Source: Macrostomum lignano (Eukaryota). Taken from it: a stretch of DNA of 64,000 nucleotides. The DNA lies in the NCBI GenBank assembly GCA_002269645.1, contig NIVC01001862.1:1-64000 (forward strand), written 5' to 3'. The stretch's first letter is position 1, and each line of letters starts with the position of its first letter. The notes under the pieces are model-generated. The model was not told the origin of the DNA. It worked only from the letters and a program-made list of their open reading frames with translations, and did no database searches. The position numbers were made by a program, and so were the translations under genes. Shown one piece after another: positions 1 through 58,326 of this stretch.

Positions 1-1
1 T

Positions 2-3000
2 CTGACAATTTGTCGCCACACGTTGGCTGGCTTGGAGTTTGAAGGCGTCACAAGCGAAGCGTTAGTCTACGACCTCAACACGCTCGTGACAAAACGCTCT
101 CGGTGTATTAACTGGAGTCAGGCTAGACGCGAACTGCACCAGTTATTTAACAACAACATATCAAAGCTGGCGCCAGATTGGAATCACAGTCGATGCAGAA
201 CGCCACCATTCGATCATTGGACTGTACATGCGTTTAAGAAATCGATTGGTAAGTGACGCTTTGATTTCATCTACATCGATTGAAACAAGACACCCTCTCT
301 CATAAATCGAACCCTCTTTTACAGGCACTACAAACAATCTTATCCAAGCCATCACTTTTGAATCGCAAGGGCCAGGCTGTTTTCACAGAACAAGTTCAGG
401 TCAGGTGGATTTTAACTACTGTGGCACGCCGGTTTGCGGTGAGTTTTTGATAATGGGAAGATTTTTTTCAGCGCAAATGAAGTAGACTTCAGTTAACCTT
501 TGTATATTAAAGCTCCTTTACCAAAACGTTCGCATTTTTACATATCACTAAAACTACTGAAACAAAAATAAATTCTTTCATTATAGCTCAAATATAAATG
601 GATAAAAATCGCAAATCTTTTTAAATTCAGAGCTGTTTGTGAACGGTTAGAACTTGCATCTTACTTTTTCAGCCATGAACCATCGTCCAGAGACCGAGTG
701 CGTCACGCAGGAATCAAACAAGCCAATCTACATGGGAAACATTAGTATTTCAAAGTCTGGCAAGCCATGCTTGAACTGGGCCGATCTGCAGAACAAACGA
801 CTTGACGCGCACTATAGAAATCTTAATGCCAACTTTGAATATAAAGTTTTTCTACCAGAGATAAAGAACACGTCCAAAATGCACAATATGTGCCGTTCAG
901 CTGTCGTTCTGTACAAAGACAGGTCTGCACAGCTAGGATGGAGAAGCGACAGCTCACTATTTATAGATGGCGAGGAGATTGCCGATATTGAAAATCAACC
1001 TTGGTGCCTGGTGTCCGGTCAAGGCGGCAACATTAGCAAGGAGTTTTGCGCGATTCACAGCTGCGGTAAGCTTTGCAGAACTATGTACGGTAAGCTTAAT
1101 AAGTAGTTAAAAGTAATTCCATATTCGCAGTTACTCTGACAACACCGTATTCATCTTAACTAATCGAAAAATACAACGGATTTCAGCCAATAACATACAG
1201 AGCATCTACGGAGTTATGCACATAAAACACAAGCCGTACATACTTTCTAAACTACTTGGTCACGAGAGCAAGTCAGAAATACTGGACTGCCAGTTCGGCT
1301 CGGTGAAGTGCACTTCGGCAGACTTCGATACCCTGCACCATCCGTACTACGGGGCTTGTTTCAAGTTCAAAAGCGAACGCTTCCTACGTGGCCTAACCCC
1401 GAAGCAGCAAGCGAGACGAAAGTTAAACATTCGACTATTCGCGGACGATCACAGCTATAAAGGCCAGACAACACCAAGCTATGAGCACATAAAAGGCATA
1501 GTAGCTGGACCGGCTAGTCGGGAAGAATTACGGCAAGCCGGTTATTACACATTTATCCTACCACCAGGACATTTTCCAGTAATTGGCCAGGCTCACACGG
1601 CTAACACTGGCAGCCACATTGAGTTCAAGATTGCTTACGAGAGAAACAAACGCGTACCTGTTAAAGATTCGAATTGTATCGTCTCGGAACAAACTGACGA
1701 TCAAGATAGCGTTGAGTATTTCATTCCTACCTGGTCTTCAGAGGGTAGACCAATAAAGGACCGGCAGATGGACAGACAGAACAAACTGACGGAAACTATG
1801 GATAATCTAGATCCGTCGTATGGGTAAGCAGGTCTATAACTTCACTGGAAAGATATGCGAGATGAATTCCCTGATAAGACTAAGCGCTCTTTTGAAACCT
1901 ATGTAGTATCTGTATGCTCATACAGAAGAGATTATACAGATTAGTCATACCTTATCCACTTTACATAGAAATCAGTAGATACGCCGACAGAGTCTGCGTA
2001 AAACACGAATTTTTGTGAAATGTGAGACCGGATGCTGATTAGGTAGAACTCATTCAGACTTGATGTTCTACTATAAACATGTAAGAACTGATTGCACTTT
2101 TTTGCAGCGATGTTAACAACCTAACGATGAAATTCCGAAACACACAAGAAACCTGCATCAATGACTACGTTTTGGCGAAGTTCATTAAACGTTGCGAGTG
2201 TCTACCATACTTTCTGCCAATACCAACCAAGTACCTAAAGTATCCGTGGTGCTACCAATGGAATAAGAGCGGCACGGACGACTATGGGCCAGCGATGCGC
2301 AGGCTTATTAAAGACGACGCCTGTTCTGCCGAGTTAATCAACAGTCTGGAAGACATTAGCAGCGAAGGCTGGAATCATTGCACTGCCAATTGTGAGATTG
2401 AGCGCTACAACATCCAACAGGTAAGTTGTAGACGTCAACGGTGAGCTTTTTAATTTCATTCAAATGACCACTCGCAACTAATTAAGGTATGACTAAAACA
2501 AGCCCCCTCTGCACGGACATGCTAAGTACAGTCAGATTGATCACGAAGAAACAATCGAAAAGTTTGCGCGTACTAATAAGCTAATGAAAGAAAATCCGAC
2601 AAAAAGCAGATTAGATCTTACATCAAACAAACTTTTTGCAGATTGTGGTTTTTCAGCCAAAGAAGACTTCGAAGCTTCTCGAAAGACAAAAAAACTTCTG
2701 TGATGCACTCACTTGTCTTTTAGAAAATTAAAGGCAATATGGTTAACACGACTCAAAGGGTTTGAACATGACTCAAAAGCGACAAATGAATAACATGTCT
2801 AGCGACCCAGATAAACATACGCATCAGTGAAAGTAAAAACAGTAGAAATCTAGCATTCATGATTACTTTTAATTGTCTTACCAATGAATGGAACAAAATA
2901 ATATTTTAGTCTCAACCCTATACACCCTTCATTAAACAGATTAACAAATACTGGCCGGACATATTCTATCATGGATTCATGACAACTCTGCAAAAGCTGC

Positions 3001-3503
3001 TCACGCTGAAAGGCTTTCCCAAGACAGTCAGCCCGGAGCTTGGCCTATCAATGCTATTCTATACACACGAGAAAGCCAGATCCATTTCAACAACGGAGAA
3101 TGCCAGTATTGTGCAGACAATGCAACAAATGATCGACGCGGCTAGAAGCAATCTAGTTTGGATAACAATCGGCAGTGCGGTTGAACACGGTCTAATGATC
3201 GAGGAGGAGATCTCCTACACGGCTAATAATCTACTAGCCGAGATGGGCGGCGCTCTGGGCCTATGGTGCGGCATATCGCTTTTGACATTCTGCGAACTGC
3301 TAGAACTAGCTGTCTACGTGGGCCTGGCTTACTGCAAACGGGTCGCCGACTGGTGGAATTGGTGGCGCATCAACGCTAGGGCAACCAAGGCTGAGATAGC
3401 TGCCACTGCTGCTGCCGCTGCGGCTGCCGCCAAGGCCGCGACTGGCACCGGCGGACAACAGGGTGAAGCTGCCGAAAATTCCGTGCCGTTAAATAAGCAT
3501 TAA
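2..3503 (+). CDS. DEG/ENaC (amiloride-sensitive Na+ channel family) subunit with two tandem kringle-like domains in the ectodomain; 5' end (TM1) lies upstream of the window
   Basis: Reconstructed exons <2..248, 325..438, 673..1065, 1187..1823, 2108..2420, 2910..3503. All introns are GT..AG with matching phases; total 2298 nt = 766 codons including stop. DEG/ENaC motifs: LGHESKSEILDCQFGSVKCTSADF..HPYYGACFKF; Cys-rich thumb (TC..KRCECLP..C..C..HCTANC); YWP; TM2 YTANNLLAEMGGALGLWCGISLLTFCELLEL with GxS filter. Exon 4 might hide an additional small intron near 1745-1800. Confidence 0.85.
11..437 (+). other. Kringle-like domain 1 (split by intron 249..324) within the DEG/ENaC gene
   Basis: Spliced translation C-RHTLAGLEFEG...RC-INW...WNHSRC-RTPP...GPGC-FHRTSSGQVDFNYC-GTPVC gives six Cys in kringle order, with the CxxW, CR and PxC...YC..PxC hallmarks. 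Confidence 0.65.
699..1064 (+). other. Kringle-like domain 2 (single exon 673..1065) within the DEG/ENaC gene
   Basis: EC-VTQESNKPIYMGNISISKSGKPC-LNW...HNMC-R...PWC-LVSGQGGNISKEFC-AIHSC matches the kringle consensus C..Y.G..S.T.SG..C..W..HN.CR..PWC..E.C.I..C, with all six Cys present. Confidence 0.85.
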
Positions 3504-3580
3504 CGCAATAACTTTGATTATTAATTTACAAGAATAACCGATCAATTTCAAACAAGAGCAGACAGACGCAGACAGAAAGA

Positions 3581-3682
3581 CAGATGGACTTCTTATATTC
3601 AGATAGACGAACTTTTCATATTCAGATGGACGGACTTTTCATATTCAGTTGACGGACTTTTCAAATTCAGATCGACGAACTT
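3581..3682 (+). repeat. Short 23-bp tandem repeat (~4 degenerate copies) in the 3' region of the kringle-DEG/ENaC gene
   Basis: Units like ttcagatggacggacttttcata. Confidence 0.6.
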
Positions 3683-4589
3683 ATTGTTAAACCTACATTA
3701 TACCCTTACACCGTAGATTCGTAGTTATACCATACACATTCAGAAAATTCTGGTCTCTATCAAATCCAAAAGCAATATTTTAACATTACCAAGTGTAACA
3801 GACTAAATCAGGCCATATAAGTATTACTTTTAACGTTCTTTTTTCTCCCGTTAATTAAGCGTGCACCTCTAACGAAGATTAAAAATTATTTTATAAGTTT
3901 AATATTAGGCTTATTGTATTCGGTGTTGACCCTGTTTTATTATATTGGCAAAATCCCACATGCACTACTTACAGTAACGCACTGTGTCAAGCTGTTGGAT
4001 TCAACCATCAATCAGTAGCTACTCACTTAAAGTAATTTACTAACCAATCTAATCTACTGAGCACATTTTTATGCGCTTACCAATTCAAAGGTAAGAACTT
4101 ATCAATAAAAAACTACAAAGAAACAAATTTCCAGACGAAAGCAAATCAAATGGACGACTTAATTTATTTCATTTTGTAAGCATAATTGCAGCTACACTGC
4201 ATCGATTCGCACAGTAACACAACATTCACATACTGTAACTCATTTGCAATATTGCTTAAAATGAGTTATGTGGTAAAATGCATTGAAGCCATAAATTGAT
4301 GCTCAAAATGCCAATTCGAGTACTGAACTGCAGGACAACAAATTGCAATCAAATACAGCACATTATCATTCGTCACACCAAGCACACAAAGATGCAAAGA
4401 TCCAACACAAGCACCTCAGTCATCCTAGAAATCCGAGATGTTTCAAACCTTTAGTGACAGACGGTTTGCGAAATCTCAGTACCTAAAAGATACAATGATT
4501 ATCATAACGACATAAAGCATGGGGGCTTTTTGCAATCTCAATAGGATATATTGGTACTGTAGATAGGTGGTCATAACTCAAAGATCTTT

Positions 4590-4891
4590 AATTAGTTGAT
4601 TGATTACTCCTGCCCCAATTGGGCCAGATGTGCAACCGACAGCTTAGCCGCAGCTATTGCGCGGTGCACCTGAAGACTACGTACGGCTGTTCAGTTCAAG
4701 GACTGGAGGTCACCAAACACACCCTGAATTACCCCAGCTAATTCTGGTACCCGTTTTACAGCTGGGGGAACTGAAGCAATGCAGACTTAAGTGTCTTGCT
4801 CAAGGACACAAATTGTTCCAGTGGGATCGGGAATCGAACCCTCGACCTTAAAGCCGCGAGTCGGACGCTCTAACCACTAAGCTACAACCCC
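4590..4891 (-). mobile_element. tRNA-derived CORE-type SINE (MIR-like core)
   Basis: The minus strand begins ggggttgTAGCTTAGTGGttagagcgtccgactcgcggctttaaggtcgagGGTTCGATTCCcgatcccac (Pol III A and B boxes, tRNA-like head). It is followed by gtgtccttgagcaagacacttaa...cttcagttcccccagctgtaaaacggg, resembling the CORE consensus tgtgaccttgggcaagtcacttaa...cctcagtttcctcatctgtaaaatggg. The 3' boundary is approximate. Confidence 0.8.
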
Positions 4892-5032
4892 ATTTAAGAT
4901 CTTATAAGCCTATTAGTTTATCCGAGCGATTAGACAGGGGGATGACAGCTTAATGGATAGCTAGAAGTCCCAAGCACATGTAGAAATTTAAAATGGCCTA
5001 CAGGCATTGTAAGCCTTTTCAATTTGCTCACG

Positions 5033-5785
5033 TCAATCAGTATTCGCAGGTTCAATAACTCCCAAGCAAACGTTGGCAAAGTCTACAAACAGAGGCAGCT
5101 GCATCGCCCGCTCCAGGTCAGCTTCCGGTCTCCGACTGCCGTTAAGTCGGACGAGCAGCTCTCGCAGCTCCGGATTGCCTAGCAGCTTAATGAGCTGCGG
5201 GCACTGCCGCAGTCGGGCTAAATTTTCAGCTGCCAAATAATCTTCGCTGTCTAGACCGAGATCAAGCAGCTCGGCGCAAGGCGCGGGCGGCGGCTGCTTC
5301 TTCTGCTCTTCTGCTAGCTGACGTCGCCTTCTTTCGGCTAGAAATTCGCGAGTCTCTCGCTCCTCTTTGGCATTGCAGCCGGCGCGATGACGGGCGCAAC
5401 AAGCTGTCGAACAATAGCGAGCCAGCTGGCAGCCAGGGCAGCGGTACTTCGGAGCCGGTGATTCGCATACTGAGCAGCGAAGACGATCAAGCTTAGGCAA
5501 AGGCCGCGGGCGTAGGAAACTTCCGCTGGCGCTACCGCTGCCACGACCACGACCGCGGCCGCCTCCGCGACCACGATAGCCAGAGAAGCCGCCTCTTCCG
5601 CCTCCCCTGCCTCTGCCTCTTCCTCCGCCACCTCGATAATTATTATAGCCGTTATTGATTGGCCCAGTTAGAGAAGTATTGCCGCCTGCTTCGGTTACTC
5701 CTACATCTGCAGCAGGGTTAGCGGCAGCTGCTGCTGCTGGATGGCAATTGTTGCCATGGTATCTTTGCTGCCTGAATCGATTCAT
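5033..5785 (-). CDS. ZNHIT3: Zinc finger HIT domain-containing protein 3 (box C/D snoRNP assembly factor) with RGG/GAR-rich N-terminal extension; single exon, 250 aa
   Basis: zf-HIT CSVCESPAPKYRCPGCQLARYCSTACCARHRAGC. C-terminal ZNHIT3-type segment LRQCPQLIKLLGNPELRELL...AMQLPLFVDFANVCLGVIEP. ATG start and TGA stop. Confidence 0.85.
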   Translation of the reverse strand: MNRFRQQRYHGNNCHPAAAAAANPAADVGVTEAGGNTSLTGPINNGYNNYRGGGGRGRGRGGGRGGFSGYRGRGGGRGRGRGSGSASGSFLRPRPLPKLDRLRCSVCESPAPKYRCPGCQLARYCSTACCARHRAGCNAKEERETREFLAERRRRQLAEEQKKQPPPAPCAELLDLGLDSEDYLAAENLARLRQCPQLIKLLGNPELRELLVRLNGSRRPEADLERAMQLPLFVDFANVCLGVIEPANTD

Positions 5786-6876: not shown

Positions 6877-9055
6877 ATGAATAACGACAGAAAGCAAATC
6901 AAAGCGAACAGTCGAGGTAAAGACAAGGATCTCTATTGCCAAATGTCTGGATTCTGTCAGCGCACAACTATACACGGTCTGTCCCATATGTACCAATCGA
7001 AAACATCAAAACGGAAAATCTTCTGGCTAACAGTATTCGTGCTTGGCCTCGTTGCTACTATAGTGCATCTGACATTTCATGCGATGCAATTTCTGGAATC
7101 GCCAACCATTATCACGTTGGATCATGAAGGTTCTGAATTCGAATTTCCTGACGTCACAATCTGCTCGCAAACGCCTACAACAAGTCGATTCTACGAACGA
7201 GGAACGGAAAAATTTCCAAACATACAAAACGGCTTTACAGCGATGGATCTTCTTTTGTATCCGGTTTACAATCAAACATACGATTCCGTACATTTGCTTC
7301 CCTACAAAGAGGAAATTCTATTACATAAAAGACTAATACAGCACCAGTATGCATCTATGCCAACAAAGCACAAAGGTTTCGCCCTCGATGAGCTGGTTAT
7401 CAAATGTAGCTTTCACAAGTCAGATTGCAGATTACAGTTCACCTTACTACAGAATCCGTATTATCTGAACTGTTATACCTTCCAACCGCCGGAACGAAAC
7501 TTAAAGACTACTAGACCAGAAGACGGCCTGTTGCTGCTTCTGTACATAGGAAATGCCCAAAAGAACAATATCTTTCCAGGCAAAAATGCTACCATAACTA
7601 GCCGCAGTCGACCAACTAGTCAAAAAAGGGAAACTAGCAACGATTGGTTTGCTCGAATTCTTCTACCGGAGTACGAACCGGCAGGCGTGAAAATTGTCTT
7701 CCACGAAAAAGACGCATTCCCAGCTCTTAGAGCAGCTGGTTCGATTGTGGGAGCCGGACAGTTTAGCGAGATCGAATTAGGTAGGTAAAAAATTAACTGC
7801 TTTGCTCTTATTACACAATTAGATCTGAAAAGGATCCCGCGTCGAGATGTTATCGAGGGAGTCTTTGATTACGATTTGATAAAACTTACAACAGCTAGTC
7901 TTTAAATCACGCTTAGAAATTTGATACAAGTGAGCTGGGAGAAACTATTAACATTACTTTAAAAACTATACTTACCTACCAACAGGTATGATACAAGAAC
8001 GAAAACTAAACAAGGGATCCTCACCCTGTGTTGACACTGAACCAAAAGTGTGGTTTCTAACCAGCTTAGACGAATCTGGTTGGCCTGTGTTTCGCGAATT
8101 CAACGCCGAACCTGGCGACTGCATTTACGAATTTCAACAGCGAGACCTATACAAGGAGTGCGGCTGCACTAGCCACCGAGTACCGCTGCAGCGAGATCAC
8201 AAAATGTTTAACAGCATTGATCGTGGCGATCAAGTAGGCTGGTGCTACAACAGCACTAGCTTGTTACTAGATCTTGGGCTAGATGTCAACCAGATTGTCA
8301 AATCGGTGAAAGGGGATCCTGCCAAACTAGTTAATATCAGTAAAACAGCGATCCAATCTAGCCACGCCAATAGTCGCCTGGTGGAGCGCTATTTACGAAG
8401 AGTCAACTGTCATGATAGCCTATTGGACAGGTTCAGCGATCCGCACTACAACAGTATCCAACAGTGCACTGACGGCGGCGAAAAGGCGCTCTATGCCTGC
8501 CAGAAAAACGAGTACAAATCTGTTCATAGCACAGCTAGCTGGCCAAGATATTCGGATATCCAAGAAATTATCGAGGAGGATATTCTTCCAGCACTGCTCA
8601 TACCGAAGAACAATCTTAGCGACGGCAATAAAACTAAAGTTGAGTATCGACCATTAGCGCACGATCTATTCGACTTCGATTCGAACGGCCAGTGGATAGC
8701 TCAAGTGGAGTTAGTAAAAGAAAATTTTGTTAAACTGCAACTACACCCAGTCGAGGTGCTAGTCAATGTGCACAGAGAGGAACCGGCATACAGCATCTGG
8801 GAGGCGCTCGGAGAACTAGGTGGCATCATCGGACTATGGCTGGGCATGAGTTTCCTTGGCGTCATTGAGGTGTGCGAATTCGTTATCGATTTGACATCGG
8901 CTGCTAGACGAGGCAAGACTTTACAGTTAGTGAAGCGAAAAGAGCCCGATGCAGTGAGCGGGCCCTATGGAGAAGCTGAAAGCGCAGCGCCAGAGCTTCT
9001 GCTATCGGAAATACCGAATGGTGTCGACGTGGATCAGTCGACGCAAAATTGCTGA
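6877..9055 (+). CDS. DEG/ENaC family channel subunit (FaNaC-like architecture), 2 exons, 657 aa
   Basis: join(6877..7780,7986..9055), phase-1 GT..AG intron, 1974 nt. Motifs: TTIHGL pre-TM1, TM1 IFWLTVFVLGLVATIVHL, EFPDVTIC, C.F..SDC, PYYLNCYTF, G..I.FHE, Cys-rich thumb, SWP, TM2 LGELGGIIGLWLGMSFLGVIEVCEF. Confidence 0.9.
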
Positions 9056-12895: not shown

Positions 12896-13670
12896 TTTTA
12901 TCTGCCTCTCCGCTCCCTCAGTCCCTGATCTCTGCCTCTCCGCTCCCTCAGTCCCTGATCTCTGCCTCTCCGCTCCCTCAGTCCCTGATCTCTGCCTCTC
13001 CGCTCCCTCAGTCCCTGATCTCTGCCTCTCCGCTCCCTCAGTCCCTGATCTCTGCCTCTCCGCTCCCTCAGTCCCTGATCTCTGCCTCTCCGCTCCCTCA
13101 GTCCCTGATCTCTGCCTCTCCGCTCCCTCAGTCCCTGATCTCTGCCTCTCCGCTCCCTCAGTCCCTGATCTCTGCCTCTCCGTTCCCTCAGTCCCTGATC
13201 TCTGCCTCTCCGCTCCCTCAGTCCCTGATCTCTGCCTCTCCGCTCCCTCAGTCCCTGATCTCTGCCTCTCCGCTCCCTCAGTCCCTGATCTCTGCCTCTC
13301 CGCTCCCTCAGTCCCTGATCTCTGCCTCTCCGTTCCCCCAGTCCCTGATCTCCGCCTCTCCGTTCCACCAGTCCCTGATCTCTGCCTCTCCGCTCCCCCA
13401 GTCCCTGATCTCCGCCTCTCCGTTCCCCCAGTCCCTGATCTCCGCCTCTCCGTTCCACCAGTCCCTGAATCCATCTCTCCACTCCCTCAGTTCCTGGTCT
13501 CCGCCTCTCCGTTCCACCAGTCCCTGAATCTATCTCTCCGCTCCCTCAGTCCCTGATCTCTGCCTCTCCGCTCCCTCAGTCCCTGATCTCTGCCTCTCCG
13601 CTCCCTCAGTCCCTGATCTCTGCTCTCCGCTCCCCCAGTCCCTGATCTCTGCCTCTCCGCTCTATCAGTC
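12896..13670 (+). repeat. Minisatellite array A, 30-bp unit tctgcctctccgctccctcagtccctgatc (family shared with arrays at 26.1-27.7 kb and 59.4-61.7 kb)
   Basis: Near-perfect 30-bp periodicity 12901-13320, more diverged copies to ~13670. Confidence 0.95.
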
Positions 13671-13771
13671 CTTGAACCTACCTCTTTTTGAATAAAATTA
13701 AAGAACCGTAAAGTTTTTACAATCAGAATAATATTAACAAAAAGCCGACACGAGTTCAAACCACAGGTGGT

Positions 13772-20770: not shown

Positions 20771-20774
20771 TAAG

Positions 20775-21131
<357 letters not shown>

Positions 21132-25900: not shown

Positions 25901-28900
25901 TAATTAATATGTGATTAGCTGGGCAGAAAAGAAGAAAGCTGTCCCTGAATCTGCGAGTTGAACTTGTATTTATACAAACATAACGAGCAGGTTAGCTGAA
26001 ATATCTGTCGTAAATTAACGGTTCGGATTCTCTGTGGGGAACAGCATGGTAGTCGAAGGGAATCGGCTAGCTGAAAAGTACGAGGCTGAATAGCAAAACA
26101 GAAAGTACAAATATTTGGAGGATGGAAATCCGACACCCTGAATCTGCCTCTCTGCTCATCCCTCAGTCCCTGAATCTGACTCTCCGCTCCCTCAGTCCCT
26201 GAATCTGACTCTCCGCTCCCTCAGTCCCTGAATCTGACTCTCCGCTCCCTCAGTCCCTGAATCTGACTCTCCGCTCCCTCAGTCCCTGAATCTGCCTCTC
26301 CGCTCCTCCCTCAGTCCCTGAATCTGACTCTCCGCTCCCTCAGTCCCTGAATCTGACTCTCCGCTCCCTCAGTCCCTGAATCTGCCTCTCCGCTCCCTCA
26401 GTCCCTGAATCTGCCTCTCTGCTCATCCCTCAGTCCCTGAATCTGCCTCTCCGCTCCCTCAGTCCCTGAATCTGCCTCTCTGCTCATCCCTCAGTCCCTG
26501 AATCTGCCTCTCCGCTCCCTCAGTCCCTGAATCTGACTCTCCGCTCCCTCAGTCCCTGAATCTGACTCTTCGCCCCTCCCTCAGTCCCTGAATCTGCCTC
26601 TCCGCTCCTCCCTCAGTCCCTGAATCTGCCTCTCCGCTCCCTCAGTCCCTGAATCTGACTCTCCGCTCCCTCAGTCCCTGAATCTGACTCTCCGCTCCCT
26701 CAGTCCCTGAATCTGCCTCTCCGCTCCTCCCTCAGTCCCTGAATCTGACTCTCCGCTCCCTCAGTCCCTGAATCTGACTCTTCGCCCCTCCCTCAGTCCC
26801 TGAATCTGCCTCTCCGCTCCCTCAGTCCCTGAATCTGCCTCTCCGCTCCCTCAGTCCCTGAATCTGACTCTCCGCTCCCTCAGTCCCTGAATCTGACTCT
26901 TCGCCCCTCCCTCAGTCCCTGAATCTGCCTCTCCGCTCCCTCAGTCCCTGAATCTGACTCTCCGCTCCCTCAGTCTCTGAATCTGACTCTCCGCTCCCTC
27001 AGTCCCTGAATCTGACTCTCCGCTCCCTCAGTCCCTGAATCTGACTCTTCGCCCCTCCCTCAGTCCCTGAATCTGCCTCTCCGCTCCCTCAGTCCCTGAA
27101 TCTGACTCTTCGCCCCTCCCTCAGTCCCTGAATCTGCCTCTCCGCTCCTCCCTCAGTCCCTGAATCTGCCTCTCCGCTCCCTCAGTCCCTGAATCTGCCT
27201 CTCCGCTCCCTCAGTCCCTGAATCTGACTCTCCGCTCCCTCAGTCCCTGAATCTGCCTCTCTGCTCATCCCTCAGTCCCTGAATCTGCCTCTCCGCTCCC
27301 TCAGTCCCTGAATCTGCCTCTCCGCTCCCTCAGTCCCTGAATCTGACTCTTCGCCCCTCCCTCAGTCCCTGAATCTGACTCTTCGCCCCTCCCTCAGTCC
27401 CTGAATCTGACTCTTCGCCCCTCCCTCAGTCCCTGAATCTGCCTCTCCGCTCCCTCAGTCACTGAATCTGACTCTTCGCCCCTCCCTCAGTCCCTGAATC
27501 TGCCTCTCTGCTCATCCCTCAGTCCCTGAATCTGCCTCTCCGCTCCCTCAGTCCCTGAATCTGCCTCTCCGCTCCCTCAGTCCCTGAATCTGCCTCTCTG
27601 CTCATCCCTCAGTCCCTGAATCTGCCTCTCCGCTCCCTCAGTCCCTGAATCTGCCTCTCCGCTCCCTCAGTCCCTGAATCTGCCTCTCCGCTCCCTCAGT
27701 CCCTGAATCTGCCTCTCCGTCCCCACTACCAGTGTCTCAGAGGTTAATTTCCAGTATTTAGCCAATAAATCAGTAAGCGCAATGTTAGTGAACGGGTTTT
27801 TTAAAAAGTCGAACACTGACGGACGCAGCGCGTACTTTAGCAAGTAATTAAATATTGGGCACCGCGTTTAAGTTCAAGCATGGCGTGACGAGCTATTCTC
27901 TAGCCTCCGAAGATTAGCAGAAAATACAGCCCGGATACTTAAAGCAGAGAATAAAATGGCTTAATTAGCGTAAATGAGTTTAATCAATATAACAAAAAAT
28001 GTCTAGCAATTTTCGCTTTCAAGGTAAACTTAACAATTGGATAATAAATGATACACATTTTGACTACAGGACATGCCAACATTATATTACATGTCAATCT
28101 ACCACAACACATACCTACCCTACCCCAACACATTTATCTACCTACCACAAGTCCGCATACTTACGAGTATCTACCGACAACAAAGCATACCTAATACAAC
28201 ACATATCTATCACAACCAAATCTACCTACAGCACATACCTATCTACCTACCACAACTATCTACCTAACACATCTATCTACCTTACCACATCTATCTACCT
28301 TACCACATCTATCTACCTTACCACATCTATCTACCTTACCACATCTATCTACCTTACCACATCTATCTACCTTACCACATCTATCTACCTTACCACATCT
28401 ACCTTACTACATCTATCTACCTTACCACATCAATCTACCTTACCACATCTATCTACCTTACCACATCTATCTACCTTACCACATCTATCTACCTTACGAC
28501 ATCTATCTACCTTACCACATCTATCTACCTTACGACATCTATCTACCTTATCACATCTATCTACCTTACCACATCTATCTACCTTACCACATCTACCTTA
28601 CTACATCTATCTACCTTACCACATCTATCTACCTTACCACATTTATCTATCTTACCACATCTATCTACCTACCACAACAAGCTTTTATAATCATGGAATA
28701 GAAACAATTCAACTCACCAGCGGATCACCTGTCGATCCCATGCCAGCCTCTTCGTCATCTGCGCCAGACAAGCCAGGTGTAGAATGAGTTTTATTCGATC
28801 GAAAGGCCACCAGCCAGACAAGCACCCATACGATGCCGCCAAAGCCGAACAAATAGAATGGCGAGCTCCAATCTAGATGGGGACAGATTAACGTAGACAG

Positions 28901-29844
28901 AGTCTGTCCAGCTGATCCCAAAGCTACTAAATAGCCAAAAGCTGTCGACCTCTGTTCAGCCGGTACTCGCAAAGCCAGCAGATGGAATATCGCCGGCAGG
29001 CCTAAGCCTTCGCCCAAGCCTAGAGCTAAACGACAAGCGACTAGAGCGGAGAACGAGGAACTGGCGCAAGACGGAGTGAGCAGTGTGGACACGGACCATA
29101 GGGCTACGGCGAGGGTTAGGACCAGTTTGCCGCCGTAGCGTCTGGCAGCGCTGCCAGCTACCAAGGTTGAAGCGATGTAGCCAACAGGAAATGCAGATAG
29201 GATGGTGCCCTGGGCGGGGTTACGCGGGGTTGGCAGCAGTAGTAGGAGTAGAAATACACGGATACAGCTTACGTGGGTAGAACACAGAGCAACTCTCGGA
29301 TAGAACACACTGATGGAACACACTGGGATAGAACACATTGGTATAGAATACGCATATAACACAGATATAACACACGGGCATAGAACACACATGGATAGAT
29401 AGAAGACACGGGGATAGAACACACAGGGATAGAAGACGCGGGGATAAAACACACGGGGATAGAAGACACTGGGATAGAACACACGGGGATAGAACACACT
29501 GGGGTAGAACACACTGGGATAGAACACACGGGGGTAGAACACACTGGGATGCTACACAGGGATAAAAAAGAATCGGTATAAAACACACAGGAAACGGCAT
29601 ACAAACCGAATTTCTAACATTTTAAAGGACTATTATAAACTTAGCAAAGTGCATAGAAACTTAGAATAATAACCTGATCATGCAGAGTCCAGCCAAACTC
29701 CTGAGCCATAGGGATAATTGTGATTGGCATAATAACTCGATCAGCTGAGTTAATAAAATTAGCCAACGAGCATAGTGCCACTGTGGTTCGGGTTGAGGCT
29801 GACCAAACTGACAAACCAGAGTGTTGGTTCCCAATACTATACAT
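22986..29844 (-). CDS. SLC17A9: SLC17 family (anion:cation symporter, MFS) transporter, most similar in style to vesicular nucleotide transporter SLC17A9; 5 exons, 426 aa
   Basis: complement(join(22986..23256,24163..24307,24895..25096,28718..29209,29674..29844)). All introns GT..AG with consistent phases; 1281 nt. Motifs: NFINSADRVIMPITIIPMAQEFGW, GTILSAFPVGY, RRYGGK, RLALGLGEGLGLPA, ERS-type EQRS, WAIYIAHFSMNWSNY..WLPTY, NHADVAPGHAG..FAVSN..ATIPG. Exact orthology is unverified. Confidence 0.85.
23380..23990 (+). repeat. Degenerate purine-rich minisatellite (gggtagata/gggtagataaaga units), intronic
   Basis: Visual periodicity within SLC17 intron 4. Confidence 0.85.
24340..24850 (+). repeat. 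Degenerate ~30-bp minisatellite (ctcagtgagatctcaatctatattcaaaat), intronic
   Basis: Recurrent ctcagtgagatctcaa motif at ~30-bp spacing in SLC17 intron 3. Confidence 0.8.
26136..27725 (+). repeat. Minisatellite array B, 29-bp unit tctgcctctccgctccctcagtccctgaa with interspersed 32-bp variants
   Basis: Period 29, with variants tctgactc, cttcgcccctcc and ctctgctcatcc. Isolated copies at ~25845-25885. Confidence 0.95.
28255..28670 (+). repeat. 18-bp minisatellite (catctatctaccttacca), intronic
   Basis: About 20 copies. Confidence 0.9.
29270..29590 (+). repeat. 15-bp minisatellite (gggatagaacacacg), intronic
   Basis: Visual periodicity in SLC17 intron 1. Confidence 0.85.
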
Positions 29845-42367: not shown

Positions 42368-45300
42368 TCACAGGGACGTCCGCCGAAGCGACGCAATGAG
42401 ATCGGCGTCTTGCGACTGGCGAACTCCCTCCAGGGTGCTTCCGTTCAGACGCCACACGATTTGTTCCTCTTCGTTGCTGCGAGGTCCCGCCGCTGCCACC
42501 GCCATCTGCATCGCTTCAATATCCGTGTCGTTGACAGCCGCAGCGTGGGATCTCTGTCGCGTCAGACCTTGGAGACTCTGCTGATCAGCTCCCTGGCCGA
42601 GAAGACCGACGCTGTGACCACCGTGACTGTGCCCGTGACCGCCGTGACTGTGCCCGTGAGAATTATGCTGCGCGCTCAGATCAAAGTGCTGCAACTCCCA
42701 ATTCTTGTCGCGTTCGAGAAGACGCGGGCCAAGCAGGGAGATGAGAAATGCGCCGACAGGGGCAGTCAGCATGATCACTATAGCGGCGATGGTGAGGATC
42801 TGCAGAGCCATGTCCACGTGCTCCTCATTGCGTGGCGACTTAGCCAGAGCCATGTCCAGCGCCACCGGACCGATGGCGGCTTGTACAGTGGCCTTCGGTA
42901 GCCAGGAGAAGGGCACGAATAGGCGCTCTTTGAAGTTCAAATTGGTGCCCAGCATGCACAGGAAGCTGGCCACCATGCGGAAGACCAGGCCGATGCCCAC
43001 CACGGCGAGACCTTTGATCAGAGCCAGCAGGTGGATCTTCTCGAATAGAATCTGGCCGCCAATTAGGCCGAACAGCATCGGCTGCATAAACCACCAGAGC
43101 GTGTCCAGCGGGGCCAGCATGGGGTTGTCCTCCTCGGCCCAGCCGTCCCACCGACGCCATCCGTAGCCGGCAACGAAGGCCAAGGTGAGAACACCGAGGG
43201 CACCTGGGGAGTGGAGTAGTAGTAGTAGTAGCAGTAGTATTAGTAGTAGGGATTCAATTAAAAGATTCTGGAGCCTACATCCGACAAAGAGTAAAAGTAC
43301 ACGCTAGTTGATTTTGCTACGAGGCGCGAGCATCAGACGGGGTGAGGGGTGGAATGCTGGCTTCTAGAAAAAGCTTTCCCACCGTGACTGAAGCGAAGGC
43401 TAAGAGACGGACACGTGGCAAATTGATGGATGACTTTAGCCTCGCCGCCGGAGAATAGAGCAGCAGCTATGTGGGGCCCAACTAAGCCCCGGAGACATAA
43501 GGCGGCAATCTATAAAATGCGTTGGTTAACACACGCTGCCTTGTGTATGCATACGATTTCCATTGCTCCGGCCTCCGTACCACACAGACCCTACGGCTAG
43601 GGTAGCCCGAATATTTAAGCCTGAACTAATTAGCAAGTCAAGCGTTGTACTCTTCACTTCCTTCTTTCAAGAGTAGAGAAGACGAAAAAACTTGCTTTTC
43701 TGCCCAGGCGCCTTCACTATTAAAAAGCTCAGATTACAGAACGGCCTACTTATTCAACGACCCACTCACTGATTCGTTCAGCCAATTACCCGAGAGTTCA
43801 CTCTCAGGCACATTCACAAATTCAATCAAATGTAATTATAAAATCTGTCATGTCAAATCTAGTTTAGTACCAGCGTAGTCTAAATATCTAGTTTATTTGC
43901 CTACTGTTCTATTTTAGTGCCCCAATGCTAGACAATTTTGGTAGCCTAATTGTCTAGCTTAATGGCCTAATGGTCGAGTTAAGTAATCTAATGGTCTATT
44001 TTAGTAGCCTAATAGTCAATTTTAGTAGCATAATAGTCGAGTTTAGTAGCCTAATGTTCTATTTCAGTCGCCTAATGGTCTAGCTTAGTAAGCCTAATGG
44101 TCTATTTTAGTAGCCTAATAGTCAATTTTAGTAGCATATTAGTCGAGTTTAGTAGCCTAATGTTCTATTTCAGTCGCCTAATGGTCTAGCTTAGTAAGCC
44201 TAATGGTCTATTTTAGTAGCCTAATAGTCAATTTTAGTAGCATAATAGTCGAGTTTAGTAGCCTAATGTTCTATTTCAGTCGCCTAATGGTCTAGCTTAG
44301 TAAGCCTAATGGTCTATTTTAGTAGCCTAATAGTCAATTTTAGTAGCATAATAGTCGAGTTTAGTAGCCTAATGTTCTATTTCAGTCGCCTAATGGTCTA
44401 GCTTAGTAAGCCTAATGGTCTATTTTAGTAGCCTAATAGTCAATTTTAGTAGCATAATAGTCGAGTTTAGTAGCCTAATGTTCTATTTCAGTCGCCTAAT
44501 GGTCTAGCTTAGTAAGCCTAATGGTCTATTTTAGTAGCCTAATAGTCAATTTTAGTAGCATAATAGTCGAGTTTAGTAGCCTAATGTTCTATTTCAGTCG
44601 CCTAATGGTCTAGCTTAGTAAGCCTAATGGTCTATTTTAGTAGCCTAATAGTCAATTTTAGTAGCATAATAGTCGAGTTTAGTAGCCTAATGTTCTATTT
44701 CAGTCGCCTAATGGTCTAGCTTAGTAAGCCTAATGGTCTATTTTAGTAGCCTAATAGTCCATTTTAGTAGCATAATAGTCGAGTTTAGTAGCCTAATGTT
44801 CTATTTCAGTCGCCTAATGGTCTAGCTTAGTAAGCCTAATGGTCTATTTTAGTAGCCTAATAGTCAATTTTAGTAGCATAATAGTCGAGTTTAGTAGCCT
44901 AATGTTCTATTTCAGTCGCCTAATGGTCTAGCTTAGTAAGCCTAATGGTCTATTTTAGTAGCCTAATAGTCCATTTTAGTAGCATAATAGTCGAGTTTAG
45001 TAGCCTAATGTTCTATTTCAGTCGCCTAATGGTCTAGCTTAGTAAGCCTAATGGTCTATTTTAGTAGCCTAATAGTCAATTTTAGTAGCATAATAGTCGA
45101 GTTTAGTAGCCTAATGTTCTATTTCAGTCGCCTAATGGTCTAGCTTAGTAAGCCTAATGGTCTATTTTAGTAGCCTAATAGTCAATTTTAGTAGCATAAT
45201 AGTCGAGTTTAGTAGCCTAATGTTCTATTTCAGTCGCCTAATGGTCTAGCTTAGTAAGCCTAATGGTCTATTTTAGTAGCCTAATAGTCAATTTTAGTAG

Positions 45301-46968
45301 CATAATAGTCGAGTTTAGTAGCCTAATGTTCTATTTCAGTCGCCTAATGGTCTAGCTTAGTAAGCCTAATGGTCTATTTTAGTAGCCTAATAGTCAATTT
45401 TAGTAGCATAATAGTCGAGTTTAGTAGCCTAATGTTCTATTTCAGTCGCCTAATGGTCTAGCTTAGTAAGCCTAATGGTCTATTTTAGTAGCCTAATAGT
45501 CAATTTTAGTAGCATAATAGTCGAGTTTAGTAGCCTAATGTTCTATTTCAGTCGCCTAATGGTCTAGCTTAGTAAGCCTAATGGTCTATTTTAGTAGCCT
45601 AATAGTCAATTTTAGTAGCATAATAGTCGAGTTTAGTAGCCTAATGTTCTATTTCAGTCGCCTAATGGTCTAGCTTAGTAAGCCTAATGGTCTATTTTAG
45701 TAGCCTAATAGTCAATTTTAGTAGCATAATAGTCGAGTTTAGTAGCCTAATGTTCTATTTCAGTCGCCTAATGGTCTAGCTTAGTAAGCCTAATGGTCTA
45801 TTTTAGTAGCCTAATAGTCAATTTTAGTAGCATAATAGTCGAGTTTAGTAGCCTAATGTTCTATTTCAGTCGCCTAATGGTCTAGCTTAGTAAGCCTAAT
45901 GGTCTATTTTAGTAGCCTAATAGTCCATTTTAGTAGCATAATAGTCGAGTTTAGTAGCCTAATGTTCTATTTCAGTCGCCTAATAGTCTAGCAGTAAGCC
46001 TAATGGTCTATTCTAGTAGCCTAATAGTCAATTTTAGTAGCCTAAATGGTATATTGCTAGTTTGATAATAGAACAGTATAGTTCTATAGCCTAATAGTCT
46101 AGTTTAGTATCCTAATAGCATAGCTTAGTGGGCTAAATCTAACTTAGTATAGTCTAGTTTAATAGTAATAGACTAATGGCCTATTCGTACTTTTGGCAGT
46201 ATAGAATTAAAATCAATGCAAAGCCCTATCAAGCCTTAGGCTAGTGGGAAATTTCTGTACAAACCCATAGCGTAGGCTGGGGAAAAAGTCCAAATTAAGT
46301 TTCCTCTGAGACCACTTACTTGGCAACAGGCCCAGCCAATATTGCAGAGCACTGATCTTGGAGCGCCGAACTCTGCAGAATCTGCTGCCCAAACTCCCCT
46401 TACTTCCCAATTTGGCGTTTCCCATCTAACCGATCAGGAACCCCAGAGCCCAGCCCCCTTTAGTCTCTGTACCAGTATCCGCCCCAACCCCGGCCCCTCC
46501 CACGCAACCCGCTACAGCTTAAACTCGTCGGAAATTGCCTCGAGATGAGGAGCTGGGAGAGAAGAGGGGAAGAGAATGCAAGAAAGAAAGAAAACTGCTT
46601 GGGGTCTTAGAGGAAAACGAATGATGAGGAAGCGGCTACTATGCCGCGGGAGGCTGCGATGAAGAAAGAGAGAGACAGCTGAGGAGACTCAGGAGGTTTC
46701 CATTTTGCCGCTTACTCGCGCTTGGCCGGGGAAGAGAAGAACAGCGTCAAGTCGCGCGTGTGTTTTCTCCCCTTTCAGCAGCAGCAGTAAGAAGCTGAGA
46801 GCTGCGGCTGCCGCTGTTTCAAAGCTAGAAAGAGCGAGAGAGCGGGAAAGACAGACAGAGAAGAATGAGTGAGGCACTTTGTGCTCACAATTGAGTTAAC
46901 CAGGCTTGGAAACGGAATCCTCGTCATCTCGCCCTTTCCTCCTGAGCTCTCCACCGGTGCTGGATTTG

Positions 46969-47002
<34 letters not shown>

Positions 47003-47009
47003 GGCTGGC

Positions 47010-47070
<61 letters not shown>

Positions 47071-47077
47071 GGCTGGC

Positions 47078-47161
<84 letters not shown>

Positions 47162-47162
47162 A

Positions 47163-47194
<32 letters not shown>

Positions 47195-58204: not shown

Positions 58205-58326
58205 TTAGTGTCTGACTGTCTGTCTGTCTGTGTGTCTGTCTGTGTCTGTCTGTCTGTCTGTGTGTCTGTCTGTCTGTCTGTGTGTCTGTCTGTGTCTGAC
58301 TGTCTGTCTGTCTGTGTGTCTGTCTG

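What the first reader, a model, noticed from the sequence alone, without database searches (positions are those of the whole stretch)
2..3503. DEG/ENaC ion channel carrying two tandem kringle domains in its ectodomain
Seen in sequence: six exons join in frame, with canonical GT-AG introns, into one ORF reading kringle-1, kringle-2, then the DEG/ENaC GH..C.F..C..F..YG.C.F block, thumb, YWP and TM2 with GxS filter. Established: the variable segment just before the GH motif is the finger domain, the gating module of this family (protease-cleaved inhibitory tracts in ENaC, peptide-binding site in FaNaC). Kringles are protein-binding modules normally found in plasminogen/HGF/ROR/Kremen-type proteins, not as standard parts of DEG/ENaC channels. 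Inference: this is a chimeric receptor-channel whose gating may be coupled to a protein ligand, matrix tether or protease, with six kringles per trimer if homomeric. I am not aware of a characterised example, but could not search.
Basis: partly seen in the sequence, partly recalled or inferred. Interest (0 to 1): 0.88.

Follow-up and report, generated by a model that had tools for sequence, protein, structure and literature searches.

The report
Flatworm DEG/ENaC channel with kringle-bearing finger
This is a flatworm (Macrostomum lignano) gene for a DEG/ENaC-type sodium channel subunit. Its outer "finger" region carries two built-in, strongly diverged kringle modules. The design is real but uncharacterised, and it also turns up in related flatworm genes, amphioxus and acorn worms.

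Summary
Six GT-AG exons (2..248, 325..438, 673..1065, 1187..1823, 2108..2420, 2940..3503) join into one 755-aa ORF, not 765 aa, and one donor site was off by one base.

Residues 261-691 match Pfam ASC at E=5e-29, with an intact TM2 and GIS filter. Residues 4-120 and 130-251 are two tandem kringle-derived modules:
- All six cysteines are present in each.
- Every hit to solved structures is a kringle protein.
- Profile-profile probability is 93-97%.
- Both are below Pfam's Kringle cut-off, have 35-40-residue loop inserts, and have lost the lysine-binding residues.

The window starts at base 1 of M. lignano scaffold NIVC01001862.1. TM1 and the N-terminal third are therefore lost to the assembly, and GenBank has no gene model here.

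The gene belongs to a family seen only in M. lignano, with at least 8 paralog groups. Transcript-derived full-length members read TM1, finger helices, kringle-1a, WSC, kringle-1b, kringle-2, channel core. Every module is a phase 1-1 exon. The window gene lacks the WSC exon.

Canonical kringles also sit at the same finger site in amphioxus and hemichordate DEG/ENaCs, and other lineages carry LDLa, PAN, CUB or F5/8C modules there. I found no paper describing any of this.

Function is inferred: most likely a built-in extracellular docking or tether module that modulates gating.

The parts
2..248 (+). Exon 1 as far as it is visible. It encodes kringle-1a (aa 1-82: Cys1 C4, Cys2 C35 in CINW, Cys3 C65 in SRCRTP). 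Its 5' end is cut by the start of the scaffold, and it ends in phase 1.
   Evidence: P0002 shows 46 further upstream residues.
249..324 (+). Intron 1 (76 bp, GT-AG), inside kringle 1 between Cys3 and Cys4. Paralogs carry a 276-312-nt phase 1-1 WSC exon at the corresponding intra-kringle position. The window gene has none.
325..438 (+). Exon 2 (114 nt, phase 1-1). It encodes kringle-1b (GPGCF...NYCGTPVC, Cys4-6). Automatic models P0001 and P0002 skip it.
   Evidence: (aligns to the C-terminal half of HGF and prothrombin kringles).
673..1065 (+). Exon 3 (393 nt, phase 1-1). It encodes all of kringle 2 (C130...C251), with a 37-residue insert between Cys3 and Cys4.
   Evidence: (Kringle 30.6 bits).
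1187..1823 (+). Exon 4. It encodes the last finger segment, the GH...C.F..C..F..YG.C.F block and palm/beta-ball strands. This is where the Pfam ASC match starts (aa 261).
2108..2420 (+). Exon 5. It encodes the cysteine-rich thumb region (C480, C493, C495, C512, C536, C555, C559).
2940..3503 (+). Exon 6. It encodes the YWP motif, the lower palm, the pre-TM2 motif, TM2, an Ala-rich cytoplasmic tail and the stop codon TAA at 3501..3503.
3246..3329 (+). TM2 (GGALGLWCGISLLTFCELLELAVYVGLAY). The G-I-S selectivity-filter triplet lies at 3270..3278.
   Evidence: Hydropathy maximum and motif. Matches the family consensus GGxLGLWxGxSxxTxxE.

Best explanation
The feature is the 3' three-quarters of a Macrostomum lignano gene for a DEG/ENaC channel subunit. 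The scaffold end cuts off its 5' part.

**What is shown**
- The channel core is intact: GH/beta-ball block, Cys-rich thumb, YWP, pre-TM2 motif, and TM2 with a GIS filter.
- The finger, between its helical part and the GH block, carries two tandem kringle-derived modules. Each has six cysteines, and together they carry six N-glycosylation sequons.
- The modules entered by exon shuffling. Each is bounded by phase-1 introns.
- The gene belongs to a family seen only in M. lignano, with at least 8 paralog groups.
- Full-length transcript-derived members read: HG motif, TM1, FPDVY.C, finger helices, kringle-1a, WSC, kringle-1b, kringle-2, GH block, TM2.
- The window gene and its closest paralog lack the WSC exon.

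**What is inferred**
- The subunit forms trimers.
- The kringle pair sits at the outer top of each subunit and acts as a built-in docking or tether site for an extracellular partner, either a matrix or surface glycoprotein or a secreted protein.
- Occupancy or tension at that site is passed to the gate through the finger. The finger is the region where ENaC is regulated by proteolysis and where FaNaC binds its peptide.
- Classical lysine binding is unlikely, because the lysine-binding residues are gone.
For: - **Gene model and motifs:**
- **ASC domain:** E=5e-29.
- **Kringle homology:** PDB hits are all kringles and span the K1b-linker-K2a junction. hhalign gives 93.5% and 96.6%. The structural residues are invariant or nearly so across paralogs only 19-40% identical to the window's kringle 2: G21, C32, W35, C73, R74, plus C9, Y19, P109, C111, C125, C130. 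The top six Foldseek hits of the AF2 model are all kringle structures.
- **Organism and position:** the neighbouring gene is 100% identical to BOX15_Mlig015385g2. The window coordinates equal NIVC01001862.1:1-....
- **Family:** all 14 hits with E<1e-10 are from M. lignano. ASC N-part + WSC + ASC C-part occur in single proteins.
- **Transcript support for paralogs:** GenBank BOX15 models derive from RNA-seq assemblies (PMC5730564).
- **Exon maps:** K1a, WSC and K1b are phase 1-1 exons in three paralogs.
- **Finger location:** P0007 residues 97-580 correspond to FaNaC residues 155-207. The alignment to the kringle-less neighbouring paralog starts right after K2.
- **Recurrence of the insertion site:** amphioxus P0140 encodes TM1, the mosaic, a canonical kringle and the GH block in one 2765-nt exon. 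Other lineages have LDLa, PAN, CUB, TSP1 or F5/8C modules there, with the ASC profile resuming at about position 98-138.
- **Tether model for DEG/ENaCs:** MEC-4/MEC-5, UNC-105/LET-2 and ENaC N-glycans (PMC10148893).
Against: - There is no transcript or protein evidence for this particular copy. GenBank annotates no gene at 1..5032.
- TM1, the HG motif and FPxVTxC cannot be seen for this gene.
- Both kringles fail the Pfam gathering threshold.
- The AF2 model is only moderate (pLDDT 68.9), and no Foldseek hit reaches E<=1e-3.
- The lysine-binding residues are lost, so the modules could be inert scaffolds.
- No functional data exist for any mosaic-finger DEG/ENaC.
- The only dN/dS test possible had too few substitutions.
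Confidence: 0.72

Rival explanations
1. The kringle-like modules are structural elaborations of the finger with no ligand of their own, acting as a spacer or shield. The channel would then be gated like ordinary relatives, by peptide, protons or constitutively.
For: - The lysine-binding residues are lost and long loop inserts are present.
- The modules evolve fast: paralogs are 19-40% identical to the window's kringle 2, and 5 of the 10 amino-acid differences between homeologs fall in residues 164-338.
- The closest solved relatives by sequence are peptide-gated FaNaCs.
Against: - The structural core residues of both kringles are kept across all paralogs.
- The added partner domain is WSC, a putative carbohydrate-binding module.
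- Other lineages insert classical binding modules (LDLa, PAN, CUB, F5/8C) at the same site, which points to recruitment of binding functions.
Confidence: 0.3
2. This particular copy is a silent or decaying duplicate in a highly redundant neopolyploid genome, not a working gene.
For: - GenBank's RNA-seq-based annotation has no gene here.
- The assembly has 180 Mb of duplicated blocks (PMC5730564).
- A paralog copy (P0007 locus) has a 6.7-kb inverted-repeat insertion in a K2 exon.
Against: - There are 755 codons without a stop across five canonical introns.
- All structural cysteines and pore motifs are intact.
- A second allele or assembly version differs by one residue only.
- The lack of annotation is expected for a gene cut by a scaffold end.
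Confidence: 0.15
3. The kringles recruit a serine protease or plasminogen-like factor, so that gating is controlled by proteolysis as in ENaC.
For: - Kringles dock proteases or their substrates in the plasminogen, HGF and prothrombin families (established knowledge).
- ENaC is activated by cleavage in its finger (PMC9540061).
- Hemichordate relatives combine PAN and kringles, as plasminogen and HGF do.
Against: - The acidic centre of CRNPD(x)D is absent in both modules.
- The Trp of PWC is absent in K1.
- I did not look for furin-type sites or inhibitory tracts.
Confidence: 0.08
4. The architecture is a gene-model artefact. The kringle exons would belong to a separate upstream secreted-protein gene, fused to the channel only in silico.
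For: - Automatic models of this locus are unreliable. P0001 skips exon 2, and P0002 fuses two channel genes.
Against: - All junctions are phase-compatible.
- P0002 and P0012 show finger or TM1 sequence upstream of kringle 1.
- RNA-seq-derived paralog ORFs place the modules between the ASC N- and C-parts.
- In amphioxus the equivalent arrangement lies in one exon.
Confidence: 0.03

Closest known systems
M. lignano paralogs PAA82974.1/PAA59863.1 (P0007/P0157), PAA86857.1 (P0161), PAA47210.1 (P0165), PAA46972.1 (P0174), and UniProt fragments A0A1I8G9S9 and A0A1I8GPM0 (P0012/P0006). All are uncharacterised.
   Same: They share the same kringle-1, kringle-2 and channel core order and the same phase 1-1 exon logic. 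P0012/P0006 are the closest, about 40% identical to the window gene, and also lack WSC.
   Different: Most carry a WSC domain nested between Cys3 and Cys4 of kringle 1, and split kringle 2 into three exons. The window gene has neither feature.
Predicted DEG/ENaCs with mosaic fingers in deuterostome invertebrates: P0140 (assembly GCA_000003815.2, Branchiostoma floridae from memory), P0099 (GCA_000003605.2, Saccoglossus kowalevskii from memory), P0108 (GCA_041260155.1, organism not identified).
   Same: Kringle domains sit in the ectodomain between FPxVTxC and the GH block, with complete HG/TM1/TM2 channel features.
   Different: Their kringles are canonical (91-316 bits) and come with LDLa, PAN, F5/8C or Xlink-like modules. 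There is no WSC. Their channel cores are no closer to the window gene than other DEG/ENaCs (E about 1e-5), so acquisition was probably independent.
ENaC alpha/gamma finger (GRIP domain, protease-released inhibitory tracts)
   Same: A lineage-specific insertion in the finger that controls gating (established knowledge; PMC9540061).
   Different: The fold is different, it works by cleavage rather than a disulfide-knotted binding module, and I did not look for cleavage sites here.
FMRFamide-gated Na+ channel FaNaC (PDB 7yvb, 8on7)
   Same: It is the best solved-structure sequence match of the family (E=7.9e-12 for P0007). Its ligand site lies in the finger (ligand site from memory).
   Different: The FaNaC finger is about 50 residues long where this family has 250-480 residues. 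There is no evidence of peptide gating here.
C. elegans MEC-4/MEC-10 and UNC-105 with extracellular matrix partners (tether model)
   Same: DEG/ENaC gating depends on extracellular matrix contacts (PMC10148893).
   Different: In C. elegans the matrix-binding modules are separate proteins (MEC-1/5/9, LET-2). Here, candidate binding modules are part of the channel subunit.
Kremen1/2 (Kringle-WSC-CUB receptors)
   Same: It is the only well-known pairing of kringle with WSC. The paralogs combine the same two domain types (Kremen architecture from memory).
   Different: In these paralogs WSC is nested inside a kringle rather than following it. There is no CUB, and the protein is a channel rather than a single-pass receptor. 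The window gene has no WSC.

Membership tests
DEG/ENaC (Pfam ASC, PF00858) | Significant match to the ASC profile above the curated cut-off | tested here: met
   102 bits against a cut-off of 23.6, E=5.1e-29, residues 261-691 matching profile positions 131-455.
DEG/ENaC (Pfam ASC, PF00858) | TM2 with a GxS selectivity filter and the pre-TM2 motif GGxLGLWxGxSxxTxxE | tested here: met
   The sequence reads AEMGGALGLWCGISLLTFCELLE. The hydropathy maximum lies at aa 675-698. It matches the consensus of 150 family members.
DEG/ENaC (Pfam ASC, PF00858) | Cytoplasmic HG motif, TM1 and post-TM1 FPxVTxC | not testable with these tools
   These lie upstream of base 1 of scaffold NIVC01001862.1. They are present in the closest paralog P0012 (TTAHG, TM1, FQYPDIYLC) and in P0007, P0161 and P0165.
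DEG/ENaC (Pfam ASC, PF00858) | Conserved GH...C.F...C...F...YG.C.F block, Cys-rich thumb and (Y)WP motif in the ectodomain | tested here: met
   The block reads LGHESKSEILDCQFGSVKCTSADFDTLHHPYYGACFKF. There are seven thumb cysteines and a KYWPD motif.
DEG/ENaC (Pfam ASC, PF00858) | Forms trimeric amiloride-sensitive cation channels | not testable with these tools
   This needs expression and electrophysiology.
Kringle domain (PF00051) | Six cysteines in the order C1...C2(xxW)...C3(R)...(P.)C4...C5...C6 (disulfides 1-6, 2-4, 3-5) | tested here: met
   K1 has C4/35/65/101/115/120 and K2 has C130/153/194/232/246/251, with the motifs CINW/CLNW, CR, GPGC/PWC and C.xxxC. They align with the canonical cysteines. 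Disulfide pairing itself was not tested.
Kringle domain (PF00051) | Pfam gathering threshold | tested here: not met
   K2 alone scores 30.6 bits against 34.3. The whole protein scores 21.7 bits. K1 gives no hit.
Kringle domain (PF00051) | Homology to canonical kringles by more sensitive sequence methods | tested here: met
   phmmer against PDB returns 28 hits, all kringle proteins, best E=1.3e-5. hhalign gives 93.5% for K1 and 96.6% for K2. UniProt names paralog fragments 'Kringle domain-containing protein'.
Kringle domain (PF00051) | Kringle fold | tested here: inconclusive
   The AF2 model of K2 built from an 11-sequence alignment has pLDDT 68.9 and pTM 0.63. The top six Foldseek PDB hits are all kringles (prothrombin prob 0.96), but E>=0.04 and TM is 0.35-0.43. 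K1 could not be submitted because it is a spliced sequence.
Kringle domain (PF00051) | Lysine-binding site (acidic pair in CRNPDxD, aromatic groove) | tested here: not met
   CRNPD is replaced by CRTPP in K1 and CRSAV in K2. K1 has GPGC in place of PWC.
WSC domain (PF01822) / Kremen-like Kringle-WSC-CUB module | WSC domain adjacent to the kringle, and a CUB domain | tested here: not met
   The window protein has no WSC or CUB hit, and intron 1 is only 76 bp. Paralogs have WSC (E down to 5.5e-11) nested inside kringle 1, but no CUB.

The most novel reading that the evidence does not exclude
Mosaic-finger DEG/ENaCs may form an unrecognised functional class: channels that carry their own extracellular receptor or tether. 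They include the M. lignano kringle and kringle-WSC family and the kringle, LDLa, PAN, CUB and F5/8C versions in amphioxus, hemichordates and others. In the flatworm family, the kringle (plus WSC) modules would bind a matrix glycan or protein directly. Force or ligand binding at the finger would then gate the pore without accessory proteins.
Probability: 0.15. Interest if true: 0.85.

Novelty: new variant of a known kind. Interest (0 to 1): 0.6.

Why it matters
How DEG/ENaC channels sense force or large ligands is a long-standing question. In the best-studied cases the matrix-binding components are separate proteins, and the tether has never been pinned down. A subunit with binding-type modules spliced into its gating finger would make that coupling testable with a single cDNA: delete, swap or load the module and record.

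M. lignano has RNAi, in situ hybridisation and transgenesis (PMC5730564), so expression site and loss-of-function phenotype are reachable.

The wider finding is that one site in the finger has repeatedly accepted exon-shuffled modules in at least three animal lineages: kringle, WSC, LDLa, PAN, CUB, TSP1 and F5/8C. This suggests a general route by which this channel family acquires new stimuli. It also appears to be absent from the literature I could search.

Tried and rejected
- The exhaustive search and the structure predictor would not accept spliced sequences. K1 could therefore not be modelled. P0001, which lacks exon 2, had to serve as the search query.
- **AF2 on K2 alone was useless.** The single-sequence model had pLDDT 43.7.
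- **Word-indexed homolog search was of little use.**
  - The whole protein found only itself.
  - The family alignment A2 found nothing at all, not even known members. That result is uninformative and is not evidence of absence.
- **Exact look-ups failed.** P0001 and P0002 returned no contig, so the 5' exons were not recovered. Only 46 upstream residues are known, from P0002.
- **PF25866.1 not identified.** It is listed as a precomputed Pfam hit of P0001. It is not hit in the local Pfam and appears in no paper.
- **dN/dS uninformative.** Between homeologs P0007 and P0157 there are only 16 differences, giving pN/pS 0.49.
- **Pfam scan of all 150 hits refused.** The call exceeded the size limit. 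I replaced it with a local kringle HMM and scans of the 26 longest proteins.
- **Direction of WSC change left open.** The split (window + P0012/P0006 | the rest) cannot be rooted without a kringle-bearing outgroup, so I cannot say whether the WSC-less state is ancestral or a loss.
- **Rejected: chimeric gene model.** See the rival explanations.
- **Rejected: recent tandem duplication with the neighbouring DEG/ENaC.** The two are only 20% identical, and a ZNHIT3 gene lies between them on the opposite strand.
Full report
**1. What is in the sequence**

Reading 1..4200 and joining candidate exons gives six exons: 2..248, 325..438, 673..1065, 1187..1823, 2108..2420 and 2940..3503. All have AG/GT borders. 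Together they form one open frame of 755 codons ending at TAA 3501..3503.

- The exon 4 donor is at 1823/1824. With 1824 the frame breaks.
- The product is 755 aa, not 765.

- LGHESKSEILDCQFGSVKCTSADFDTLHHPYYGACFKF
- a cysteine-rich thumb
- KYWPD at the start of exon 6
- AEMGGALGLWCGISLLTFCELLE, with GIS as the filter and the only strong hydropathy peak at aa 675-698

**2. Channel part**

Pfam ASC matches residues 261-691 at E=5.1e-29. The match covers profile positions 131-455 of 455, so the N-terminal third of the domain (HG motif, TM1, FPxVTxC, first finger helices) is missing.

The reason is the assembly. The neighbouring gene (6877..7780 + 7986..9055, 657 aa) is 100% identical to GenBank BOX15_Mlig015385g2 of Macrostomum lignano. 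The GenBank contig carrying it, NIVC01001862.1 of assembly GCA_002269645.1, has that gene at exactly the window coordinates, with the fetched range starting at base 1. So the window begins at the scaffold end, and the channel gene is cut there.

GenBank annotates nothing at 1..5032. Two automatic models from another annotation exist in UniRef/MetaClust:
- P0001 (718 aa) skips exon 2 and differs from the window by one residue, A to V.
- P0002 (1227 aa) is a chimera with the downstream channel gene. It supplies 46 residues upstream of the window (MQDYMSLLRNEVENPEETAHVKALNEELVKWQRNITDAMLQYNHE), which look helical and are compatible with finger helices.

**3. Are the N-terminal modules kringles?**

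Evidence on the weak side:
- Pfam is only suggestive. Exon 3 alone gives Kringle at 30.6 bits against a cut-off of 34.3, and module 1 gives nothing.
- AF2 on exon 3 without an alignment failed (pLDDT 43.7).
- With 11 aligned sequences the model reached pLDDT 68.9 and pTM 0.63. Its six best Foldseek PDB matches are all kringle structures (prothrombin, uPA, HGF NK1, c-MET/HGF, apo(a) KIV-8). None reaches E<=1e-3, and TM-scores are 0.35-0.43. This agrees with a kringle fold but is weak.

Stronger evidence:
- phmmer of residues 1-260 against all PDB sequences returns 28 hits, every one a kringle protein. The best is E=1.3e-5, an HGF tandem kringle.
- The top alignments run from ESQGPGCFHRTSSGQVDFNYCGTPVCA (exon 2), through the linker, into ECVTQ...YMGNISISKSGKPCLNW (exon 3). 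This is the end of one kringle, the inter-kringle linker and the start of the next.
- Family profiles compared with ten canonical kringles give 93.5% (E=2.4e-7) for module 1 and 96.6% (E=5.4e-10) for module 2. All alignable cysteines are in register.
- Both modules have all six cysteines.

I conclude that both modules are kringle-derived but highly diverged:
- The Cys3-Cys4 loop is 35 residues in K1 and 37 in K2, against about 11 in canonical kringles.
- The CRNPD acidic centre reads CRTPP in K1 and CRSAV in K2.
- K1 has GPGC where canonical kringles have PWC.

The classical lysine-binding site is therefore not conserved. Six N-glycosylation sequons lie in the two modules, consistent with an extracellular position.

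**4. Exon 2**

The automatic models skip it. It encodes Cys4-6 of kringle 1. It aligns to the C-terminal half of solved kringles and to the closest paralog, where VQGPFCFHRSGSSDSRLDINYCGVPFC matches SQGPGCFHRTSSGQVDFNYCGTPVC. It is a symmetric phase 1-1 exon of 114 nt. Skipping it would leave three unpaired cysteines. The six-exon model is the better one.

**5. Relatives**

An exhaustive phmmer search of 1.84 billion representatives with P0001 gave only 264 hits at E<=1e-3 and 14 at E<1e-10. Every one of those 14 is from M. lignano, apart from the query P0001 itself, whose source names are withheld.

These relatives define a family. After TM1 and some finger sequence, the order is kringle-1a, usually a WSC domain (PF01822, E down to 5.5e-11), kringle-1b, kringle-2, then the GH block and the rest of the channel.

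| Paralog | Length | Accession |
|---|---|---|
| P0007 | 1052 aa | PAA82974.1 |
| P0157 | 1052 aa | PAA59863.1 |
| P0161 | 1033 aa | PAA86857.1 |
| P0165 | 1091 aa | PAA47210.1 |
| P0174 | 860 aa | PAA46972.1 |

GenBank BOX15 models are ORFs of RNA-seq-based transcript assemblies (StringTie/TACO/TransDecoder; PMC5730564). For these paralogs, the fusion of the modules with both halves of the channel therefore has transcript support.

The closest relatives of the window gene are fragments P0012 and P0006, 37-41% identical to it over the module region. P0012 shows HG motif, TM1, FQYPDIYLC, about 90 finger residues, K1 and K2 without WSC. This is the architecture expected for the window gene.

UniProt's automatic names for family fragments already include 'Kringle domain-containing protein', 'WSC domain-containing protein' and 'Amiloride-sensitive sodium channel'.

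**6. How the architecture arose**

I mapped three paralog proteins onto their loci (L001, L004, L005). The structure is conserved:

| Module | Paralogs | Window gene |
|---|---|---|
| K1a | one exon, 297-303 nt, phase 1-1 | visible exon ends in phase 1 at 248 |
| WSC | one exon, 276-312 nt, phase 1-1 | absent; 76-bp intron at this position |
| K1b | 123 nt, phase 1-1 | 114 nt, phase 1-1 |
| K2 | three exons, overall phase 1-1 | one 393-nt exon, phase 1-1 |

Phase 1-1 module exons are the classical signature of exon shuffling (established knowledge). The WSC exon sits in the intra-kringle intron, which explains how one domain came to be nested inside another. I could not decide whether the WSC-less state is ancestral or a loss.

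**7. Where in the channel**

The kringle-less neighbouring paralog aligns to the window protein only from residue 255 onward, right after K2. P0007 aligns to Aplysia FaNaC (7yvb) at residues 10-97 against 66-155, and at 580-613 against 207-240. About 480 residues therefore replace about 50 finger residues. The modules are in the finger, just upstream of the last finger segment and the GH strand.

**8. The architecture is not unique to flatworms**

A local HMM of canonical kringles run over all retrieved proteins, followed by Pfam, showed three further complete DEG/ENaCs with canonical kringles at the same site:
- **P0140** (1262 aa): Xlink-like, F5/8C and one kringle of 91.5 bits.
- **P0099** (1507 aa): LDLa x4, PAN x5 and kringle x4.
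- **P0108** (1613 aa): LDLa x4, PAN x5 and kringle x5.

All three have TTxHG, TM1, FPxVTxC, the GH block and a GxS TM2. Their sources are as follows:
- P0140 lies on GCA_000003815.2, which I recall as Branchiostoma floridae.
- P0099 lies on GCA_000003605.2, which I recall as Saccoglossus kowalevskii.
- P0108 lies on GCA_041260155.1, which I could not identify.

In P0140, a single 2765-nt exon encodes everything from before TM1 through the kringle to the GH block, so no gene-model error can explain it.

Other hits carry different modules before the ASC profile resumes (at about position 127-138 in most, 98 in P0060):
- LDLa x3-8, one of them with ShK
- CUB x2 + TSP1 + LDLa
- F5/8C + PAN

In P0099 the LDLa and PAN modules mapped so far are again phase 1-1 exons.

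The finger is thus a recurrent landing site for shuffled extracellular modules. The channel cores of these deuterostome proteins are no closer to the window gene than ordinary DEG/ENaCs (E about 1e-5). Their kringles are canonical, so independent acquisition is likely.

Six literature searches combining kringle, WSC or LDLa with ENaC, degenerin, ASIC, amiloride-sensitive or amphioxus domain-architecture terms found nothing describing such channels.

**9. Mechanism**

*Shown:* an intact channel core, two disulfide-type modules in the finger, and conservation of their structural residues across paralogs only 19-40% identical to the window's kringle 2.

*Inferred:*
- The subunit trimerises, so a homomer would carry six kringles.
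- The modules project from the top and outer side of the ectodomain.
- They act as a docking or tether site whose occupancy or tension is passed to the gate through the finger.

The tether idea has precedent in MEC-4 with MEC-5, UNC-105 with LET-2, and ENaC N-glycans (PMC10148893). The partner domain chosen by the paralogs, WSC, is a putative carbohydrate-binding module (Pfam description and my own knowledge). Plasminogen-like lysine or protease docking is disfavoured because the binding residues are lost. An inert structural role cannot be excluded.

**10. Verdict**

The gene is a new variant of a known kind: a DEG/ENaC subunit with an exon-shuffled, kringle-derived finger.

It has a family in the same genome and analogues in other phyla. 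No member has been characterised, and the recurrent mosaic finger seems not to have been described.

Main caveats:
- There is no transcript evidence for this copy.
- The 5' third is missing from the assembly.
- The structural support for the kringle fold is only moderate.
- There are no functional data.

Noticed in passing
window 1 (= NIVC01001862.1 base 1): The window starts at the first base of an M. lignano Mlig_3_7 scaffold. The kringle-channel gene is therefore truncated by the assembly, not by the choice of window. GenBank has no gene model at 1..5032.
   Followed up: yes
window 6877..7780 and 7986..9055 (+): A second, complete two-exon DEG/ENaC gene (657 aa, identical to BOX15_Mlig015385g2) has an ordinary short finger and no kringle. 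It is only 20% identical to the kringle channel. Automatic model P0002 wrongly fuses the two genes.
   Followed up: yes
L001 6059..12788 (M. lignano NIVC01000440.1, paralog PAA82974.1): A 6.7-kb insertion with 1836-nt, 100% identical inverted terminal arms splits a kringle-2 exon of this paralog. The GenBank CDS bridges it with a junction that is not a canonical GT-AG intron. The homeolog PAA59863.1 (L006) has the exon intact. It is either a very recent foldback-type transposon or an assembly palindrome.
   Followed up: partly
P0033, P0047, P0052, P0060, P0110, P0136, P0142 (hits): Predicted DEG/ENaCs from other organisms carry LDLa x3-8, ShK, CUB x2 + TSP1, F5/8C or PAN modules at the same finger site. 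I did not identify their source organisms.
   Followed up: partly
window 12901..13675, 26136..27723, 59361..61709: Three large arrays (26-81 copies) of a 29-30-bp minisatellite share the core CTGCCTCTCCGCTCCCTCAGT. They generate long spurious ORFs on both strands.
   Followed up: no
window 43937..46045, 49031..50248, 54850..56354: Further satellites: a 106-bp unit x20 (98% matches), a 40-bp unit x30 and a 63-bp unit x24. The 63-bp array produces 524-aa artefactual ORFs on both strands. (GACA)n/(GATA)n microsatellites lie at 20773..21131, 46970..47206, 58209..58868 and 63217..64000.
   Followed up: no
window 52220..53137 and 42368..43183 (-): Two exons of a Na+/H+ exchanger gene (Pfam Na_H_Exchanger profile positions 6-110 and 244-369) lie about 9 kb apart. 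That interval is filled with the satellite arrays.
   Followed up: partly
window 28709..29542 (-); 5033..5785 (-): An MFS_1 transporter exon (E=9e-21) and a ZNHIT3-like gene (zf-HIT + ZNHIT3_C). The ZNHIT3-like gene lies between the two channel genes on the opposite strand.
   Followed up: partly
window 4822..4891 (-): An Rfam tRNA match barely above threshold (30.1 bits against 29, E=0.03). ARAGORN finds no tRNA in the window. It is probably a tRNA-derived repeat or a chance match.
   Followed up: partly
P0001 (database annotation): The precomputed Pfam list for the window's protein names PF25866.1 upstream of ASC. That accession gives no hit in the local Pfam copy, and I could not identify it.
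   Followed up: partly
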